A DNA stretch of 14,055 nucleotides, taken from Octopus sinensis (Eukaryota). Below the pieces are notes generated by a model. It was not told the DNA's origin. It searched no databases and saw only the letters and a program-made list of their open reading frames with translations. The stretch spans positions 1-14,055 of the forward strand of contig NW_021825953.1 of the NCBI RefSeq assembly GCF_006345805.1. The letters run 5' to 3'. The translations under genes and the position numbers were made by a program. The first letter of the stretch is position 1. Every line of letters begins with the position of its first letter. Below are positions 5,235 through 14,055 of the stretch, one piece after another.

Positions 5235-5301
5235 ATTCAAGTGGAGCACAACCAACCATTTACAGTATTTCGTGTGGTCAGACCAGGATTTATCGAAATA
5301 T

Positions 5302-5453
5302 GGGCGGAGAAATGGCTGTGTAGCTAAGAAACTTACTTTGCGGCCACGTGATTCTGCGTTCAATCCCATTGCACGGCAACTTGGGTCTTCTGCTACAGAT
5401 TCAGACCATCCAATGCTTCGTCAGGGAGTGTAACAGACGGAAATTTAGTCGTA
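5302..5453 (+). mobile_element. Degraded 5' part of a tRNA/CORE-type SINE (family of 12412-12793)
   Basis: tggctgtgtagctaag (A box), gttcaatccc (B box), then ggcaacttgggtcttctgctacag...cagacggaaa, matching the other copies with deletions. Confidence 0.75.
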
Positions 5454-5509: not shown

Positions 5510-6690
5510 CGAGGGGCGTTCAATAAGTAATGCCCCTGACCCACTTCCCATAGCAGTAGAGCAACGAAACTTGGCACAGTTATTAGTCTTTTCCTACATA
5601 GGAACCACCCAGAGTAACGCATTTCTCCCATCGTTTGATGCGGCTCTGGAGACCGTTTTTGTAGAAGAACCCAGCTTCGTCCTCCAACCTCAACGTGACT
5701 TCAGAAATCAAGACTGCATCATCTGGGAAACGCTTTCCTTTCAGAAACAACTTCATGATTGGGAAGAGGTGAAAATCAGAGGGTGCAAGGTCAGGAAAGT
5801 AGGGGGGATGGGGAGGAGTTCATAGCCATACGCCTGTGCTTCTGATCTGGCGACAAGCGAGTTGTGGACCGGAGCGTTGTCCTGCAGGAGAAGGATGCCT
5901 TTGCTGATCTTGCCCCGCCTCTTGATTTTGATAACTTCTCTTAATTTCCTCAAAAGTGAAGCATAATAGGCTCCTGCAATTGTGGTACCCTTTGCCAGGA
6001 AATCTGTCATCACTACTCCGTCCTGGTCCCAGAAGACTGTGAGCATTACCTTGCCAGCGGAGGGCTGCACCCTTGCCTTCTTTGGAGGGGGTGAGTCACG
6101 GTGCTTCCACTGCATTGACTGGGATTTGGTCTCTGGATCATCTGATGGACCCAGGTTTCATCCTGTGTAATCAGTCTTTTGAAAAATTTTGACTCATCTT
6201 CTTGGCACATCTCCAAATTCACCCTCGAGCACTCGACGCGTTCTTGCTTCTGGAAAGGCGTGAGCAACCTGGGAATCCATCTGTCAGACACCTTTTGCAT
6301 ATGCAATGGTCATGAATGATAGTTTCCACAGACCCGGTACTAATCTTGACCTCATTGGCTATTTGGCGAATAATTATGCGTCGATCTTCCAAAATGGCAG
6401 CCTCAACTTGACGGACAGATGCCTCATCAATGGCAGAAGGGGGCGACCAGATCTGGGAGCTGTTTCCACAGAGTTCCGACCATGTTTGAATTCACGATGC
6501 CAGCGTTTTACAAGGTCATATGATGGGGCATCATCACCATAAGTTACTTTCATTTCATCAAAAGTCTCCCGTGGTGTGCGTCCTTTCAAATACAAAAACC
6601 GGATCACTGCTAGACACTCAACAGGCTCCATTTCACACTTGACTCGGTTCAAACACCCGTAAATCAGAAACCACAATTAATTCAGAGCTA
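5510..6690 (-). mobile_element. Mariner (Tc1/mariner, D,D34D) transposon lacking its 5' TIR
   Basis: TA (5508-5509) followed by CGAGGGGCGTTCAATAAGTAATGCC is a mariner-type TIR. Transposase relics follow. No complementary TIR is found after 6690. Confidence 0.95.
5583..6631 (-). pseudogene. Mariner transposase pseudogene (~350 aa, four 1-bp deletions)
   Basis: ATG at 6631 starts MEPVECLAVIRFLYLKG. Motifs: HTH region, PRSGRP, WIPRLLT (WVPHEL motif), ITQDETW, VMLTVFWD, LLQDNAPVH, HPPYFPDLAPSDFHLF. There are 34 residues between the 2nd and 3rd D after frameshift repair. Ends RWEKCVTLGGSYVGKD* with TAA at 5583-5585. Confidence 0.95.
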
Positions 6691-7149
6691 CTTTGTCAAT
6701 GTAGCGTAGTCGACCCAGCAGGTGTCGCCATTGATCGTCTCTGTTCGAAGGTTTTATTTACCTAGTTTCGGTGGAATACATCCACTTGTTTTCAATAATA
6801 GAAATATTAAAATTACTAAGTCTCTCTAAAAGAGATTACGGCAGCGTTACTGGAAATTAATTGTTATCGCCATATTAATATGCTACGCTACATTGACAAA
6901 GGGCAAATACCCTGAAACGCGTCTGTAGCTGTCTGACTAGCAGTGTGAAGCGGCTGACCTCCCTTGTTCGAAGGTTATAATGGACACAGTTTGTGTGTCA
7001 AATAGCTATCTTAAGGCGATGGCCTCATGGAGCTAATCAGCGACAGCTTTTAGTCTTATATCTATAAGACTGCCATATTAATATGGCGATAACAATTAAT
7101 TTCCAGTAACGCTGCCGTAATCTATTTTAGAGAGACTTAGTAATTTTAA

Positions 7150-7158
<9 letters not shown>
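6691..7158. mobile_element. Hammerhead-containing Penelope-like pLTR / retrozyme-like insertion with inverted segment
   Basis: 19-bp perfect inverted repeat 6691-6709/6883-6901. 85-bp inverted repeat 6798-6882/7074-7158 with 1 mismatch. Contains a type I hammerhead. No coding sequence. Confidence 0.7.
6887..6929 (+). ncRNA. Minimal type I hammerhead ribozyme, U3-A8 core variant
   Basis: Stem I gcuaca(6887-92)/uguagc(6924-29). Core UUGACAA(6893-99). Stem II aggg-caaaua-cccu(6900-13). GAAA(6914-17). Palindromic stem III ACGCGU(6917-22). GUC cleavage triplet, with a predicted cut after C6923. Confidence 0.85.
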
Positions 7159-7186
<28 letters not shown>

Positions 7187-7220
7187 GTGTGTGTGTGTGT
7201 GTATCTGTGTGTATGTGTGT

Positions 7221-7498
7221 GAAGGAGCATAGCTCAGTGGTTAGAGCGTCGGCCTTACGATCGTGAAGTTGTGAGCTCGAATCCCGGACCGGGCTGCGTG
7301 TTGTGTTCTTGAGCAAGACACTTTATTTCACGTTGCTCCAGTTCACTCAGCTGTAGAAATGAGTTGTGACGTCACAGGTGCCAAGCTATATCGGCCGTTG
7401 CCTTTCCTTTGGATAACACTGGTGGCGTGGAGAGGGGAAGCCGGTATGCATGGGCGACTGCTGTTCGGATTTGTGTCTGTGTCGTGACCGAAGGGGTC

Positions 7499-8434: not shown

Positions 8435-8832
8435 TGTGTATTCTTTTCCACTCAAGACACAAGGTCCGAATTTTTTTTGAGGGGGAGAGGGCCAGTCTAT
8501 TAGATCGGCCCCACTACGCAACTCGCACTTAATTTGTCGACCTCGGCGGAATTTGAACTCAGAACGTAAAGACAAGAAATACCCTTAATCTTTTCTCCCG
8601 GCGTGCTAACGATTCTTATTTCTTTATTGCCCACAAGGGACTAAATACAAAGGGGACAAGCAAAGGGATTAAGTCGATTAGAGCGACCCCAGTGCGTAAC
8701 TGGTACTTAATTTATCGACCCCGAAAGGATGGAAAGCAAAGTCGACCTCGGCGGAATTTGAACTCAGAACGTAAAGACAAATGATATACCCCTAAGCATT
8801 TCGCCCGGCGTGCTAACGATTCTGCCAGCTCG
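8435..8832 (-). mobile_element. Dimeric tRNA-derived SINE with Meta/MESC-like central domain
   Basis: Minus strand reads gagctggcagaatcgttagc (head), gttcaaattcc (B box), catcctttcggggtcgataaattaagtaccag (Meta-like), then a second, internally deleted unit. Confidence 0.9.
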
Positions 8833-9175: not shown

Positions 9176-9535
9176 AGGCAGCGAGCTGGCAGAAACAGCA
9201 CACCGGGAGAAATGCTTAGTGGTATTGCGTCTGTCTTTACGTTCTGAATTCAAATTCCGCCGATGTCGACTTTACTATCCATCCTTTCGGGGTCGATAAA
9301 TTAAGTACCAGTTACACACTGGGGTCGCTCTAATCGACTTAATCCCTTTGCTTGTCCCCTTTGTGTTTAGTCCCTTGTGGGCAATAAAGAAATAAGAATC
9401 GTTAGCACGCCGGGAGAAAAGATTAAGGGTATTAAAATATTAACAGTACCAGTTGCGTACTGTGGTCACTCTAATCGACTGCCCACCTTCTCCAAAATTC
9501 CTGGCCTCGTGCCTCGAGTAGCAAAGATTATAACA
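9176..9535 (+). mobile_element. Dimeric Meta-like SINE, inverted relative to 8435-8832
   Basis: Same head, B box and Meta-like domain. The second unit is internally deleted. Confidence 0.9.
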
Positions 9536-9828: not shown

Positions 9829-9925
9829 ATTCATTCATTCATTCATTCATTCTTCTTCTTCTTCTTCTTCTTCTTTTCTTCTTCTTCTTCTTCTTCTCCT
9901 CCTCCTCCTCCTCCTCCTCCTCCTC

Positions 9926-9985
<60 letters not shown>

Positions 9986-10013
9986 ATACTAATACTACTT
10001 CTACTACTACTAC
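9829..10013. repeat. Compound microsatellite (ATTC)n-(TTC)n-(TCC)n-(TAC)n
   Basis: Direct reading. Confidence 0.95.
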
Positions 10014-10031
10014 TTTTCTTGTATATATGAA

Positions 10032-10637
10032 AGGCAGCGAGCTGGCAGAATCGTTAGCGCGCCGGGCGAAATGCTTAGCGGTATTTCGTCTGCCGTTACG
10101 TTTGAGTTCAAATTCCGCCGAGCATCCTTTCGGGGTCGATTAAATAAGTACCAGTTACGCGCTGGGGTCGATAGAAGCGATTTAATCAGTTTGTCTGTCC
10201 TTGTTTATCCCCTCTGTGTTTAGCTCCTTGTGGGTAGTAAAGAAATAGGTATTTCGTCTGCCGCTACGTTCTGAGTTCAAATTCCGCCGAGGTCAACTTT
10301 GCCTTTCATCCTTTCGGAGTCGATTAAATAAGTACCAGTTACGCACTGGGGTCGATGTAATCGACTTAATCCACTTGTCTGTCCTTGTTTGCCCCCTATA
10401 TGTTTACCCTCTTGTGGGCAATAAATAAATAAGAAACGTTAGCGCGCCGGACAAAATGCGTAGCGGCATTTCGCCCGTCTTTAAGTTCTGGGTCCAAATT
10501 CCATCGATGTCGACTTTGCTTCTCATCTTTTCGGGGTCAATAAATGAAGTACCAGTCAAGTACTGGCGTCGATGAGAACGACGACCCCGCTCCCTACAAA
10601 TTCCAGGCCTTGTGCCTATAGTAGAAAGGATTATTAT
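10032..10637 (+). mobile_element. Head-to-tail trimer of the Meta-like SINE
   Basis: Units at ~10032-10248, 10249-10433 and 10434-10637, each with a B-box-like motif and a catcctttcgg.gtcga..aa.taagtaccag-like domain. A further fragment lies near 10655-10690. Confidence 0.9.
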
Positions 10638-10909
10638 TGTTATTTCTATTACATTTCGCCGAGGTCGTCTTCGCCTTTCATTCTTTCAGAGTATCTGTCT
10701 GTCAATGTGCGTCGCTGAGTTTGTGTTTACCCCTCATCCCTCCTCTGTTACTTGATGGATTCTTACCAAGACACACTGACATATACTACATTCACTTAAT
10801 TAATTACTTACTATACTCCTGTGTAATCTATCTACGTTACATAATATCTTCCTATAAAGCTGATGCATTCAGATGAAATAGTACATCCATTAAAGAAAAG
10901 ACACTCAAA

Positions 10910-11788: not shown

Positions 11789-12084
11789 ATCACCGTCATT
11801 ACCGTGACCGACCAGGATATCAGATGTTGCTACACATCGCTGCTCACAATGCGTTTCGCATTGTTTTAGCCTTCAAATGACGCCACCCCGCTGGCTAAGT
11901 GAGCAGGTCAACAGAAGAAAGAGTCAGTGAAAGTTGTAGCGAAAGAGTAAAGCAGGAATCGCCACCACCCCCTGCCGGAGCCTCGTGGAACTTTGGGTCT
12001 TTTCGCTCAATAAACAGTCACAACGCCCGGTCTGGGAATCGAAACCACGAGTCCGCTGCCCTAACCACTGGGCCATTGCGCCTC

Positions 12085-12085
<1 letters not shown>
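11789..12085 (-). mobile_element. tRNA(Arg-like)-derived SINE, near full length, deletion between A and B boxes
   Basis: Minus strand reads ggaggcgcaaTGGCCCAGTGGttagggcagcggactcgtGGTTTCGATTCCcagacc, with a 3' tail shared with 700-781. Confidence 0.9.
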
Positions 12086-12861: not shown

Positions 12862-13740
12862 AATGAATGAAAATGAAATAAAATGAATAAATGAGAGACG
12901 AAACCCAACACCCGCCGACCGGATATTTTAAAAATCAATATGAGGTTTCAAACCTCTTACAAGAAGGAGACAGTAAAACCTCTTACTTAACATGTTTTTT
13001 GAAAACACACAATTGAGGTTATAAGCCACTACAAATAATACAAAAAGATGAGGTTTCAAACCCTCTAACGAAGCTTTTTCACTTCCTACTCATCGATATA
13101 TCCATCATTATCTTCAATGCCGCTTGAGTTCCTGTATCCTGCCATTTCCCCTGCCTCACTCATGAAGGACATCTGGGTCGTGTAATGTCCACCCGAATAT
13201 ATACGAAACTCCTCCCCTTTATCCTTTAAGCCTTTCCCACAAGAGAAACCTTATAACCTCCACAGCTATCTGCGGAGGCCATTCGGGATCCCGTGTGAAG
13301 GCCATATCTAGTGTCTCTTTATGTTCTTCTACTATTTATTCCACCTCCCACCCTTGTAGAAAAAGATGGTCGTTTCTTCCACCGTGGGTGGCACAACTTC
13401 GAGACATGCAGACGGCACATCACCCCCCCCTGCGATGACCCGTTCTTCTTTTTTCTTTTTTTCTTTTCTTCCTGACTTCGGGAGAGTGGAGCTCTTCCGT
13501 TTTGTCCGGAGACTCTCCCCCACATCCCGAAGGCTTAGGGTCCTTCGGCGGGCAACTACCGTTGCCCGCCTTCTTCCTTTTTAATCCCTTTGACCGAGTA
13601 GGGGAGGTGGCATCCAGTGATTGTTCCTAGACCTTACCATGGTCCTGGGGGCAGTTCTTTTTAATGTGGCCTGGCTGCAGGCACGAGTGACACTTGGAGG
13701 GACGTCTCTCAAGTATCAGCGGATACCTGCAGCCAGGCAT
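12862..13740 (-). mobile_element. Decayed retroelement fragment, probably non-LTR ORF1 region plus putative 3' UTR and (CATTT)n-like tail
   Basis: A CCHC zinc knuckle followed by a basic low-complexity stretch. No RT or endonuclease motifs. The minus strand ends in catttattcattttatttcattttcattcatt at 12893-12862. Confidence 0.55.
13332..13722 (-). pseudogene. ORF1/gag-like pseudogene fragment with CX2CX4HX4C knuckle
   Basis: PLILERRPSKCHSCLQPGHIKKNCPQDHGKV* (knuckle 13651-13692, premature TAG 13627-13629). It continues in frame as EQSLDATSPTRSKGLKRKK...SPEVRKKRKK, with a frameshift in the A-run. Confidence 0.75.
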
Positions 13741-13839
13741 TAAAAAAAAAATCTCGAAAAACCAGATCTGTTGCGGCCGACGGGGTCCACAGGGTCAAAA
13801 TCGCTTTTGACCCTTCCCAATCGACCGCCGGCTATACCC

Positions 13840-13883
13840 TTCCATTACCGGTTTCGGTCATTTTGAGACCTTTTCAACTGTAA
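13840..13883 (-). ncRNA. Degenerate type I hammerhead-like motif, U3-A8 core
   Basis: Minus strand: uuacag UUGAAAA gguc-ucaaaau-gacc GAA ACCGGU A auggaa. Core, stem II and the palindromic stem III are intact. Stem I pairs at only 4/6 positions. Confidence 0.45.
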
Positions 13884-13968: not shown

Positions 13969-14055
13969 TTCTGCCTTTCTCTGACTCCCTTGTTTGCACT
14001 TGTTTGTTCGGACCTCGAACACAAGTGCAAACAAGGGAGTCAGAGAAAGGCAGAA
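13969..14055. repeat. Near-perfect foldback hairpin (35 bp + 2-nt bulge + 5 bp, 5-nt loop)
   Basis: 13969-14003 is the exact reverse complement of 14021-14055. gttcg/cgaac closes the loop gacct. Confidence 0.95.

What the first reader, a model, noticed from the sequence alone, without database searches (positions are those of the whole stretch)
6887..6929. Complete hammerhead ribozyme with rare compensatory U3-A8 core
Seen: every element of a type I hammerhead in correct order and spacing: a 6-bp stem I, UUGACAA, a 4-bp stem II (R-Y closing pair), GAAA, a palindromic ACGCGU stem III and a GUC triplet. Established: the canonical core is C3UGANG8A, and C3-G8 is a Watson-Crick pair, so the double change to U3-A8 preserves it. 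Minimal hammerheads with palindromic stem III are characteristic of Penelope-like elements and cleave best as dimers. Searches for CUGANGA would miss this variant. Inference: a self-cleaving RNA cutting after C6923 in any plus-strand transcript crossing the locus.
Basis: partly seen in the sequence, partly recalled or inferred. Interest (0 to 1): 0.9.

Follow-up and report, generated by a model that had tools for sequence, protein, structure and literature searches.

The report
Variant-core hammerhead ribozyme in retroelement remnant
The motif is a genuine animal-type hammerhead ribozyme sequence sitting in a scrambled fragment of a small retroelement, but both this kind of ribozyme and its unusual U3-A8 core are already described, so it is a good catch of an ordinary thing.

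Summary
The sequence at 6887-6929 is exactly as described and is not a chance match. A matched descriptor gave 0 hits with a perfect 6-bp helix I in 200 Mb of random sequence. Element by element it matches the classical Schistosoma mansoni Sm1 hammerhead: UAC 5' of a 6-bp helix I, a 4-bp helix II, an identical loop 2 (CAAAUA), GAAA, an identical palindromic loop 3 (CGCG) and GUC.

The deviations from consensus are two compensated pairs, C3-G8 to U3-A8 and G10.1-C11.1 to A10.1-U11.1. The U3-A8 covariation is already published (Perreault 2011; Cervera & de la Pena 2014, about 1,300 copies in S. mansoni).

The architecture is the 'canonical metazoan type I' hammerhead of non-LTR retrozymes, not the PLE 'minimal' variant.

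The motif lies in a rearranged partial tandem with a 224-nt period phased on the cleavage site. Near-perfect inverted copies flank it. The block abuts a (TA)n tract and a 5'-truncated mariner. These traits fit PLE-type retro-insertion.

A second, weaker U3-A8 hammerhead-like motif lies at 13840-13883 (minus strand). Rfam models miss both motifs.

Only one complete copy is present, and helix III is 1 bp. Cleavage after C6923 is therefore expected to be weak and dependent on dimer formation. I read it as a relic: a new member of a known kind.

The parts
6883..6886 (+). CUAC directly 5' of helix I. Its UAC matches the UAC that precedes the 6-bp helix I in the Schistosoma Sm1/N79 ribozyme (candidate loop-1 nucleotides). 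Alternatively it extends helix I to 10 bp when paired with 6700-6709.
   Evidence: the 10-bp pairing appears in the circular fold of unit A
6887..6892 (+). Helix I, 5' strand (GCUACA)
   Evidence: 6/6 Watson-Crick pairs with 6924-6929
6893..6899 (+). Core positions 3-9, UUGACAA (U3 U4 G5 A6 C7 A8 A9); U3-A8 replaces C3-G8
   Evidence: the covariant is documented
6900..6913 (+). Helix II (AGGG/CCCU, with A10.1-U11.1 closing) and loop 2 CAAAUA, identical to loop 2 of S. mansoni Sm1
6914..6923 (+). G12 A13 A14 A15.1, loop 3 CGCG, U16.1, C17. ACGCGU (6917-6922) is a 6-nt palindrome that can form an intermolecular helix III. The predicted scissile bond lies between 6923 and 6924.
   Evidence: GAAACGCGUC is identical in AF036740; cofold gives the double hammerhead
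6924..6929 (+). Helix I, 3' strand (UGUAGC). In the long-range fold, part of it (from 6927) is captured by a competing hairpin at 6927-7048.
6700..6923 (+). Unit A: a 224-nt repeat unit running from the position equivalent to the cleavage site to the real cleavage site (GC 39%). It carries the hammerhead at its 3' end.
   Evidence: Direct homology of 6706-6797 with 6930-7030 (semi-global score 34 against 11.4 +/- 4.3 in shuffles, 0/3000 reaching it); size and GC
6924..7085 (+). Unit B: a diverged (about 65-70% identical) partial second unit starting at the cleavage site. Direct homology is last seen in the 14-mer GCCATATTAATATG (7072-7085, matching 6869-6882), after which the sequence switches into an inverted copy of 6798-6882.
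   Evidence: D4
6691..6709 (-). Perfect 19-nt inverted copy of 6883-6901 (CUAC + helix I 5' strand + UUGACAA + AG). It is a second, truncated hammerhead 5' half that also carries U3, A8 and A10.1. It is cut off at the junction with the mariner.
   Evidence: I2; E = 1.3e-4
6798..6882 (+). Left arm of the 85-nt inverted repeat (84/85 complementary to 7074-7158), ending in the 12-nt palindrome CATATTAATATG immediately 5' of the hammerhead
   Evidence: (I5)
7074..7158 (-). Right arm of the 85-nt inverted repeat (an inverted copy of 6798-6882)
7156..7221 (.). (TA)n then (TG)n microsatellite abutting the right end of the structure. (TA)n is a reported preferred target of PLE-type integration.
   Evidence: sequence; PMC8557442
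5510..6689 (-). Degenerate mariner-like element (HTH_48 + Transposase_1, with stops and frameshifts) lacking the 5'-terminal part of full-length copies, including the 5' inverted terminal repeat. Homology to six other copies ends at 6689, so the hammerhead is not part of the mariner.
13840..13883 (-). Second hammerhead-like motif (M2): UUACAG UUGAAAA GGUC UCAAAAU GACC GAAA CCGG UA AUGGAA. It has U3-A8, canonical G10.1-C11.1, a palindromic ACCGGU and a GUA triplet; helix I pairs at only 4/6.
   Evidence: random expectation 7e-4 per window

Best explanation
Positions 6887-6929 are a genuine hammerhead ribozyme motif of the canonical animal type I class, closest in layout to the Schistosoma Sm1/Sm-alpha ribozyme. 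It is carried by a small non-autonomous retroelement of the retrozyme/Penelope-like (PLE) lineage. In such elements, tandem units are transcribed. Each hammerhead cuts after position 17 (here GUC|U, between 6923 and 6924) by in-line attack of the C17 2'-OH. Because helix III is only A15.1-U16.1 closing a CGCG loop, two copies pair through the palindrome ACGCGU to form a 'double hammerhead'. The released unit-length RNA (here 224 nt) is circularised by a host ligase and copied back into DNA by a PLE-type reverse transcriptase. That enzyme typically leaves partial tandems and adjacent inverted copies at microsatellites. At this locus the array is a remnant. It holds one complete unit with its hammerhead (6700-6923), a diverged and truncated second unit (6924-7085), two near-perfect inverted duplications (6691-6709 and 7074-7158), a (TA)n tract on the right and a 5'-truncated mariner on the left. 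The core differs from consensus by two pair-preserving double transitions, C3-G8 to U3-A8 and G10.1-C11.1 to A10.1-U11.1. The first is a known natural, active covariant. The motif probably retains weak, dimer-dependent cleavage capacity. With a single complete copy here, it most likely has no role for the host. What is shown: the sequence anatomy, the non-random match to Sm1, the repeat architecture and the dimer fold prediction. What is inferred: the retroelement life cycle, the PLE-type integration and the residual activity.
For: Anatomy and coordinates. Uniqueness and chance: (0 hits with a 6/6 helix I in 200 Mb of random sequence). Part-by-part match to published Schistosoma sequences: UAC, 6-bp helix I, 4-bp helix II, loop 2 CAAAUA identical, GAAACGCGUC identical. 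The helices differ in sequence from Sm1 but stay fully paired: 6/6 and 4/4, covariation at most pairs. The architecture equals the 'canonical metazoan type I HHR' definition, and such motifs act as dimers. U3-A8 is a known natural covariation and is active in vitro. RNAcofold of two 53-nt monomers gives exactly the domain-swapped double hammerhead with a 6-bp helix III, -31.3 against 2 x -13.1 kcal/mol. There is a direct repeat of period 224 nt phased on the cleavage site. Unit size and GC (39%) fall within retrozyme ranges. The second, inverted 5' half shares U3, A8 and A10.1. A second independent U3-A8 motif in the window, with different helix II and loop 3 sequences that keep pairing and palindromy, argues that such variant hammerheads recur in this genome. 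Partial tandems, adjacent inverted copies and a (TA)n target are published hallmarks of PLE-type insertion. Animal retrozymes are proposed to be non-autonomous derivatives of PLEs.
Against: No Rfam hammerhead model reports it, even at E<=10. No further copies of this unit could be retrieved, so family-level conservation is untested. No reverse transcriptase or GIY-YIG ORF was seen in the window, though this check covered only stop-free stretches of 55 aa or more, ten of which were scanned against Pfam. G10.1-C11.1, described as highly conserved, is changed, and the combined effect with U3-A8 is unknown. The monomer MFE is not significantly stable (z = -1.15) and uses a non-hammerhead G5-C7/G16.2-C17 pairing. 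In longer transcripts the 3' part of the helix I 3' strand is sequestered by a competing hairpin. The 99%-perfect 85-bp arms are unlike typical imperfect retrozyme rods and could reflect DNA-level rearrangement unrelated to retrotransposition.
Confidence: 0.7

Rival explanations
1. Catalytically dead pseudo-ribozyme. The motif descends from a canonical hammerhead, but the combination U3-A8 plus A10.1-U11.1 (and loss of proper loop 1 context) abolishes cleavage even in dimers. It is purely a sequence fossil.
For: Two deviations fall at normally conserved positions, including G10.1-C11.1. PLE-type motifs already show very low activity in vitro. Rfam models give no score. The locus is rearranged and flanked by other decayed transposons.
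Against: All four changes fall in two base-paired partners and preserve pairing, while the other core nucleotides, both loops and all 10 helix pairs are intact. Random decay at that density would be expected to hit them. U3-A8 variants are reported active. U3, A8 and A10.1 are shared by the second partial copy, and U3-A8 by motif M2.
Confidence: 0.15
2. Currently functional ribozyme. The locus is a live source copy of an active retrozyme family, or a host-domesticated self-cleaving element that processes a transcript crossing it.
For: The motif is complete, with compensated changes. The dimer fold is favourable. Retrozyme RNAs are abundantly expressed in many invertebrates, including crustaceans.
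Against: There is only one complete hammerhead, so unit-length RNA cannot be excised from this locus. The second unit is about 30-35% diverged and truncated. No gene context was found; the surroundings are microsatellites, a SINE-like sequence and a broken mariner. No related sequence was found in any predicted-protein or contig search.
Confidence: 0.12
3. Chance look-alike created by inverted repeats of a DNA transposon (mariner 5' UTR, MITE or foldback). Helix I would be a by-product of terminal inverted repeats, and the core a coincidence.
For: The 5' half of the motif is part of a perfect 19-nt inverted repeat, and the whole motif lies inside 85-nt inverted arms next to a mariner.
Against: Mariner homology stops at 6689, and six other copies of that mariner have a different 5' UTR with none of this sequence. 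Even ignoring helix I, the descriptor is expected 0.01 times per window. The extra identities to Sm1 (loop 2 CAAAUA, GAAACGCGUC) bring the estimate to about 6e-14 per nt. A second U3-A8 motif occurs 7 kb away in unrelated sequence.
Confidence: 0.03

Closest known systems
Schistosoma mansoni Sm-alpha / Sm1 hammerhead (basis of the N79 ribozyme; the crystal-structure link is from my own knowledge)
   Same: Type I topology. UAC immediately 5' of a 6-bp helix I. A 4-bp helix II. Loop 2 CAAAUA identical. G12-A15.1 GAAA. Helix III of one A-U pair closing CGCG (GAAACGCGUC identical). GUC cleavage triplet.
   Different: Core pair U3-A8 instead of C3-G8. A10.1-U11.1 instead of G10.1-C11.1. N7 = C. All helix I pairs and three of the four helix II pairs have different sequence. 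The sequence 3' of helix I (the loop 1 partner) is not recognisably conserved. The carrier unit is 224 nt and unrelated in sequence.
U3-A8 covariant hammerheads (Perreault et al. 2011; Cercyon-PLE min-HHRs of S. mansoni, Cervera & de la Pena 2014)
   Same: The same pair-preserving double change in the catalytic core, mostly found as dispersed single motifs, sometimes as pairs on opposite strands 100-700 bp apart. Here a second, inverted 5' half lies 173 nt away.
   Different: The published PLE examples are 'minimal' motifs (helix II 7-8 bp, helix I 4-5 bp, a bulged nucleotide after A9, no helix III) and keep G10.1-C11.1. This one has the canonical architecture and also changes 10.1-11.1.
Non-LTR retrozymes of invertebrates (Cervera & de la Pena 2020), e.g. 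coral about 225-245 nt, mussel 350-390 nt, copepod Eurytemora affinis 278 nt
   Same: A type I hammerhead at the boundary of short AT-rich repeat units of 150-450 bp. The unit here is 224 nt with 39% GC. A direct repeat is phased on the cleavage site. The RNA is predicted to be self-paired.
   Different: Only about 1.7 units, strongly diverged from each other. Only one complete hammerhead. Near-perfect inverted duplications disrupt the array. No expression data are available.
Newt satellite 2 / avocado sunblotch viroid 'double hammerhead' (Forster et al. 1988, cited)
   Same: Helix III is too short to be stable in a monomer. A palindromic helix III lets two copies form the active dimer, which is what cofolding predicts here.
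   Different: Those occur in long tandem arrays or replicating multimers, where a second copy is always adjacent. Here no second complete copy is nearby.

Membership tests
Hammerhead ribozyme (class) | Three helices around a junction in type I order: helix I 5' strand, core 3-9, helix II, G12-A14, helix III, N17, helix I 3' strand | tested here: met
Hammerhead ribozyme (class) | Invariant core nucleotides U4 G5 A6 A9 G12 A13 A14, the A15.1-U16.1 pair, and H17 | tested here: met
   All present: UUGACAA ... GAAA ... U C
Hammerhead ribozyme (class) | Positions 3 and 8 form a Watson-Crick pair (C3-G8 in the consensus) | tested here: met
   The pair is kept as U3-A8, not C-G. This is a documented natural covariant.
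Hammerhead ribozyme (class) | G10.1-C11.1 closing pair of helix II (highly conserved) | tested here: not met
   A10.1-U11.1 (purine-pyrimidine orientation kept); conservation stated
Hammerhead ribozyme (class) | Scores above the gathering threshold of an Rfam hammerhead covariance model | tested here: not met
   No hammerhead hit at gathering score or at E<=10, even on a 76-nt slice
Hammerhead ribozyme (class) | Site-specific self-cleavage 3' of N17 giving 2',3'-cyclic phosphate and 5'-OH ends | not testable with these tools
   Needs transcription and cleavage assays or RNA-end mapping
Canonical metazoan type I HHR / non-LTR retrozyme | Helix I 6 bp, helix II 4 bp, helix III 1-2 bp capped by a 2-4 nt palindromic loop | tested here: met
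   6 bp, 4 bp, and 1 bp plus CGCG; definition
Canonical metazoan type I HHR / non-LTR retrozyme | Conserved loop 1 / loop 2 nucleotides for the tertiary contact | tested here: inconclusive
   Loop 2 CAAAUA is identical to Sm1 and UAC lies 5' of helix I. However, UAC can instead pair with 6707-6709 of unit A, and the 3' side of loop 1 is not recognisable.
Canonical metazoan type I HHR / non-LTR retrozyme | Lies in tandem repeats of 150-450 bp, each with a hammerhead; GC below 50% | tested here: inconclusive
   Period 224 nt, GC 39%, homology starting at the cleavage site. But there are only about 1.7 diverged units and one complete hammerhead.
Canonical metazoan type I HHR / non-LTR retrozyme | Expressed as linear and circular unit-length RNA | not testable with these tools
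   No transcriptome access; the source organism is not identified
PLE minimal hammerhead (min-HHR) | Helix II 7-8 bp, helix I 4-5 bp, an unpaired nucleotide between A9 and 10.1, no helix III or loop 3 | tested here: not met
   Helix II is 4 bp, helix I is 6 bp, there is no bulge, and loop 3 is present
PLE minimal hammerhead (min-HHR) | Located in the pseudo-LTR of an element encoding RT plus GIY-YIG endonuclease | tested here: not met
   No RT or GIY-YIG found among ten selected stop-free stretches from a list of those of 55 aa or more. This was not a full six-frame scan. A non-autonomous derivative remains possible.
PLE-type insertion architecture | Partial tandem copies, an adjacent inverted truncated copy, and insertion at a microsatellite such as (TA)n | tested here: met
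   Direct repeat, inverted copies and (TA)n at 7156-7181; hallmarks described. These traits are suggestive, not exclusive to PLEs.
Mariner / mariner-derived MITE as carrier | Sequence continuity with the mariner termini or UTR | tested here: not met
   Homology to six other copies ends at 6689, and their 5' UTRs lack this sequence

The most novel reading that the evidence does not exclude
The two U3-A8 motifs in this window mark a lineage-specific, still active retrozyme family. In it, a canonical, loop-stabilised type I hammerhead has fixed two compensated core-proximal pairs, U3-A8 and A10.1-U11.1. The junction at 6691-6709 would then be a genomic fossil of in vivo cleavage at the predicted site: nine nucleotides complementary to the core, joined to a unit that starts exactly at the cleavage-site position, as expected if a cDNA made on a ribozyme-cleaved RNA snapped back on helix I.
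Probability: 0.2. Interest if true: 0.5.

Novelty: new member of a known kind. Interest (0 to 1): 0.3.

Why it matters
It shows that consensus-based annotation (Rfam, CUGANGA descriptors) misses real hammerheads whose core has covaried, so animal genomes probably hold more of them than are catalogued. The combination of a canonical Sm1-like scaffold with both U3-A8 and A10.1-U11.1 is a natural 'double compensatory' variant. It would be a convenient test case for how much the 3-8 and 10.1-11.1 pairs contribute through identity rather than pairing. Beyond that it is an ordinary retroelement remnant with no indicated host function.

Tried and rejected
(1) Rfam at gathering score on the whole window, and at E<=10 on 1.1 kb, on 76 nt and on the M2 region, gave no hammerhead hit.

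(2) My first hypothesis was that the motif was part of the mariner 5' UTR or a mariner-derived MITE. It failed because six related mariner copies have a different 5' UTR and homology ends at 6689.

(3) A metagenome scan for TTGACAAAGGG-N4-8-CCCTGAAAC gave 9 hits. None was hammerhead-like, and the number is compatible with chance.

(4) Scans of prokaryote genomes and viral contigs for TGANRA-N4-CAAATA-N4-GAAACGCGTC gave 0 hits.

(5) Concatenated six-frame peptides of 6690-7160 searched against 5.8 billion proteins gave no hit. The same was true for the CCHC ORF next to M2.

(6) About 80 kb of sequence around related mariners (including an Oratosquilla oratoria chromosome) holds no hammerhead motif and shares no repeats with the window other than the mariner. 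The source species and further copies could therefore not be obtained.

(7) A look-up of a window ORF to find the source contig found nothing on record. The accession numbers appear in no paper in the library.

(8) A MAFFT alignment of HH1, M2 and Sm1 misaligned M2, so I tabulated pairs by explicit parsing instead.

(9) The supplements of the two de la Pena papers hold no searchable sequences. Przybilski & Hammann 2007 is not held, so no rate constant for U3-A8 variants could be quoted.

Full report
OBSERVATION. The window looks like an animal genome. It is dense in (TA)n, (CA)n and trinucleotide arrays, holds SINE-like and other dispersed repeats, and has no long ORFs. At 6887-6929 the plus strand reads GCUACA UUGACAA AGGG CAAAUA CCCU GAAA CGCG U C UGUAGC. 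It has a 6-bp Watson-Crick helix I, a core with U at position 3 and A at position 8, and a 4-bp helix II closed by A-U. It also has G12-A14, A15.1/U16.1 closing a CGCG loop (the palindrome ACGCGU), and C17 at 6923.

IS IT MORE THAN CHANCE? A regex descriptor finds this as the only hit in the window under strict settings. In 30 Mb of first-order Markov sequence trained on the window, I ran the descriptor without any helix I requirement: a Watson-Crick 3-8 pair, 4-bp helix II, GAAA, palindromic loop 3 and U-H. It hit 11 times, or 0.01 per window. In 200 Mb of composition-matched random sequence, restricted to C-G or U-A at 3-8, there were 5 hits with helix I at least 4/6, 1 hit with at least 5/6 and none with 6/6. 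With helix I the estimate is about 1e-9 per nt, which would still allow a handful of chance hits in a multi-gigabase genome. What removes chance is the match to a known ribozyme, described next.

COMPARISON WITH A KNOWN RIBOZYME. Two published Schistosoma mansoni sequences were used. The first is AF036740...GUCC CAAAUA GGAC GAAACGCGUC... (PMC5666329). The second is the Sm1-derived N79 cassette...GGUAC AUCCAG CUGAUGA GUCC CAAAUA GGAC GAAA CGCG... UC CUGGAU UCCAC (PMC12550524). They line up part by part with the window motif CUAC GCUACA UUGACAA AGGG CAAAUA CCCU GAAA CGCG UC UGUAGC. Shared features are:
- UAC immediately 5' of a 6-bp helix I;
- a 4-bp helix II;
- an identical 6-nt loop 2;
- an identical loop 3;
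- the GUC triplet.

Helices I and II differ in sequence but remain fully paired. Requiring loop 2 identity alone lowers the chance estimate to about 6e-14 per nt. I conclude that the motif is a hammerhead by descent, not a look-alike. High intracellular activity of this ribozyme type depends on the loop II / stem I bulge contact (PMC6412130), so conservation of loop 2 is meaningful. The UAC is less certain, because it can also extend helix I (see below).

WHAT KIND OF HAMMERHEAD. Cervera & de la Pena 2014 (PMC4209133) define the canonical metazoan type I hammerhead as helix I of 6 bp, helix II of 4 bp and helix III of 1-2 bp capped by a 2-4 nt palindromic loop. They state that such motifs are inefficient as monomers and act as dimers. 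The window motif meets that definition exactly. It does not meet their PLE 'min-HHR' definition: helix II 7-8 bp, helix I 4-5 bp, a bulged nucleotide after A9 and no helix III. The same paper reports U3-A8 in place of C3-G8 as a core covariation, with about 1,300 hits in S. mansoni. Perreault et al. 2011 (PMC3088659) report natural U3-A8 covariation and cite earlier proof of in vitro activity. The 'rare compensatory core' is therefore real but already described. A second compensated change is present here, G10.1-C11.1 to A10.1-U11.1, at a pair called highly conserved. All four departures from consensus are transitions that fall on two base-paired partners. Meanwhile the remaining core nucleotides, both loops and all ten helix pairs are intact. 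That pattern fits constraint on pairing better than random decay.

FOLDING. As an isolated 57-mer, the MFE keeps helices I and II but pairs G5-C7 with G16.2-C17, and it is not unusually stable (z = -1.15). Forcing the 1-bp helix III costs about 5.7 kcal/mol. Cofolding two 53-nt monomers gives, as the MFE, the domain-swapped double hammerhead. It has trans helix I pairs and a 6-bp ACGCGU/ACGCGU helix III, at -31.3 against 2 x -13.1 kcal/mol. In the 361-nt context, part of the helix I 3' strand (from 6927) is captured by a long imperfect hairpin at 6927-7048. This is a competing fold of the kind seen in viroid-like RNAs.

CONTEXT. To the left lies a degenerate mariner on the minus strand at 5510-6689, with HTH_48 and Transposase_1 domains and several stops. 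I first suspected that the motif belonged to its 5' UTR, because 6691-6709 is the exact reverse complement of 6883-6901. Six related mariner copies fetched from public assemblies (L010-L016) all share a different 5' end. They lose homology to the window at 6689. The mariner is therefore 5'-truncated, and the hammerhead region is not mariner sequence.

Within 6690-7160 there are three repeat relationships.
- (i) 6706-6797 is homologous in direct orientation to 6930-7030. The semi-global score is 34 against 11.4 +/- 4.3 in shuffles, with 0 of 3000 shuffles reaching it. Including UGUAGC, the homology starts at 6700 and at 6924, the latter being the first nucleotide after the cleavage site. This defines a 224-nt unit (6700-6923, GC 39%) that ends with the hammerhead, followed by a diverged second unit.
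- (ii) A perfect 19-nt inverted copy of CUAC + helix I 5' strand + UUGACAA + AG sits at 6691-6709, cut off by the mariner junction.
- (iii) An 85-nt inverted repeat (84/85) pairs 6798-6882 with 7074-7158. Direct homology of unit B to unit A is last seen in the 14-mer GCCATATTAATATG (6869-6882 and 7072-7085). That 14-mer contains a 12-nt palindrome, after which unit B continues as the reverse complement of unit A.

Both near-perfect inverted copies thus begin at self-complementary sequences: helix I in one case and the 12-nt palindrome in the other. This is what template switching would produce; that reading is an inference. The right end abuts (TA)n(TG)n at 7156-7221.

Craig et al. 2021 (PMC8557442) describe PLE insertions as partial tandems with an adjacent inverted 5'-truncated copy, often at (TA)n. 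Cervera & de la Pena 2020 (PMC7229834) place canonical type I hammerheads in 150-450 bp AT-rich tandem 'non-LTR retrozymes' in many invertebrates, including crustaceans. [quoted passage not shown] The locus fits this picture as a small, rearranged remnant. No RT or GIY-YIG ORF was seen in the window, although the check covered only stop-free stretches of 55 aa or more, ten of which were scanned against Pfam.

A SECOND MOTIF. Relaxing helix I to 4/6 reveals a second motif on the minus strand at 13840-13883: UUACAG UUGAAAA GGUC UCAAAAU GACC GAAA CCGG UA AUGGAA. It has U3-A8 again, a canonical G10.1-C11.1, a 4-bp helix II of different sequence, a palindromic ACCGGU and a GUA triplet. The random expectation for such a match is 7e-4 per window, before allowing for the few descriptor relaxations I tried. 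In the whole window, on both strands, only these two places combine NUGANNA, a helix II and GAAA at all, and both are U3-A8. M2 lies about 45 nt upstream of a short ORF with a zf-CCHC knuckle that has no detectable relatives. I take M2 as supporting evidence that U3-A8 hammerheads recur in this genome, but its own status is uncertain.

MECHANISM (inferred from the families named above). In an active array, each unit's hammerhead would cut after C17, preferentially as a double hammerhead formed by two adjacent copies. This would release 224-nt RNAs that are ligated into circles and reverse-transcribed by a PLE enzyme. At this locus there is one complete hammerhead, so no unit can be excised. 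Only inefficient cleavage, either intermolecular or by the monomer, could occur on a transcript that happened to cross it. The most likely status is a relic with residual, dimer-dependent catalytic potential.

WHAT COULD NOT BE DONE. No further copies of the unit could be found in any searchable collection. The species was not identified. The closest named relative of the mariner is in the mantis shrimp Oratosquilla oratoria, at 91% DNA identity, but mariners transfer horizontally. Family-level conservation and activity therefore remain untested.

VERDICT. It is a new member of a known kind, of modest interest.

Noticed in passing
window 13840-13883 (minus strand): A second hammerhead-like motif with the same U3-A8 core, G10.1-C11.1, a 4-bp helix II, a palindromic ACCGGU helix III and a GUA triplet, but helix I pairs at only 4/6. 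It lies about 45 nt upstream of a zf-CCHC ORF remnant (13630-13794, minus strand). Expected 7e-4 times per window by chance.
   Followed up: partly
window 5510-6689 (minus strand): A mariner-like element with HTH_48 and Transposase_1 domains, several stops and frameshifts, and its 5' end (including the terminal inverted repeat) missing. Copies 90-95% identical occur in several public assemblies, including an Oratosquilla oratoria chromosome. This suggests a widespread or horizontally transferred family.
   Followed up: partly
window 7223-7420 (plus strand): A tRNA-like head (GGAGCAUAGCUCAGUGGUUAGAGC ... GAGCUCGAAUCCCGG) followed by a non-tRNA body, as in a tRNA-derived SINE. ARAGORN and Rfam call no tRNA here. 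Other tRNA-like fragments are visible near 5300-5400 and 12047-12085.
   Followed up: no
window 8494-8823, 9197-9480, 10047-10687: A roughly 240-nt repeat family present in at least five copies or fragments in both orientations (76-95% identity), including a 237-nt inverted pair at 8578-8814 / 9197-9433.
   Followed up: no
window 13969-14055: An 87-nt near-perfect palindrome (76/87 positions self-complementary) running into the end of the window, upstream (on the minus strand) of motif M2.
   Followed up: no
window 9860-10020: A compound trinucleotide array, (CTT)n then (CCT)n then (CTA)n, about 160 nt long. The first 5 kb of the window is dominated by (TA)n, (CA)n and (AAT)n tracts.
   Followed up: no
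window 6927-7048: A long imperfect hairpin (AGCUGUCUGACUAGC... / ...GCUAAUCAGCGACAGCU) directly 3' of the cleavage site, overlapping the 3' part of the helix I 3' strand. It could act as an alternative fold that switches the ribozyme off.
   Followed up: partly
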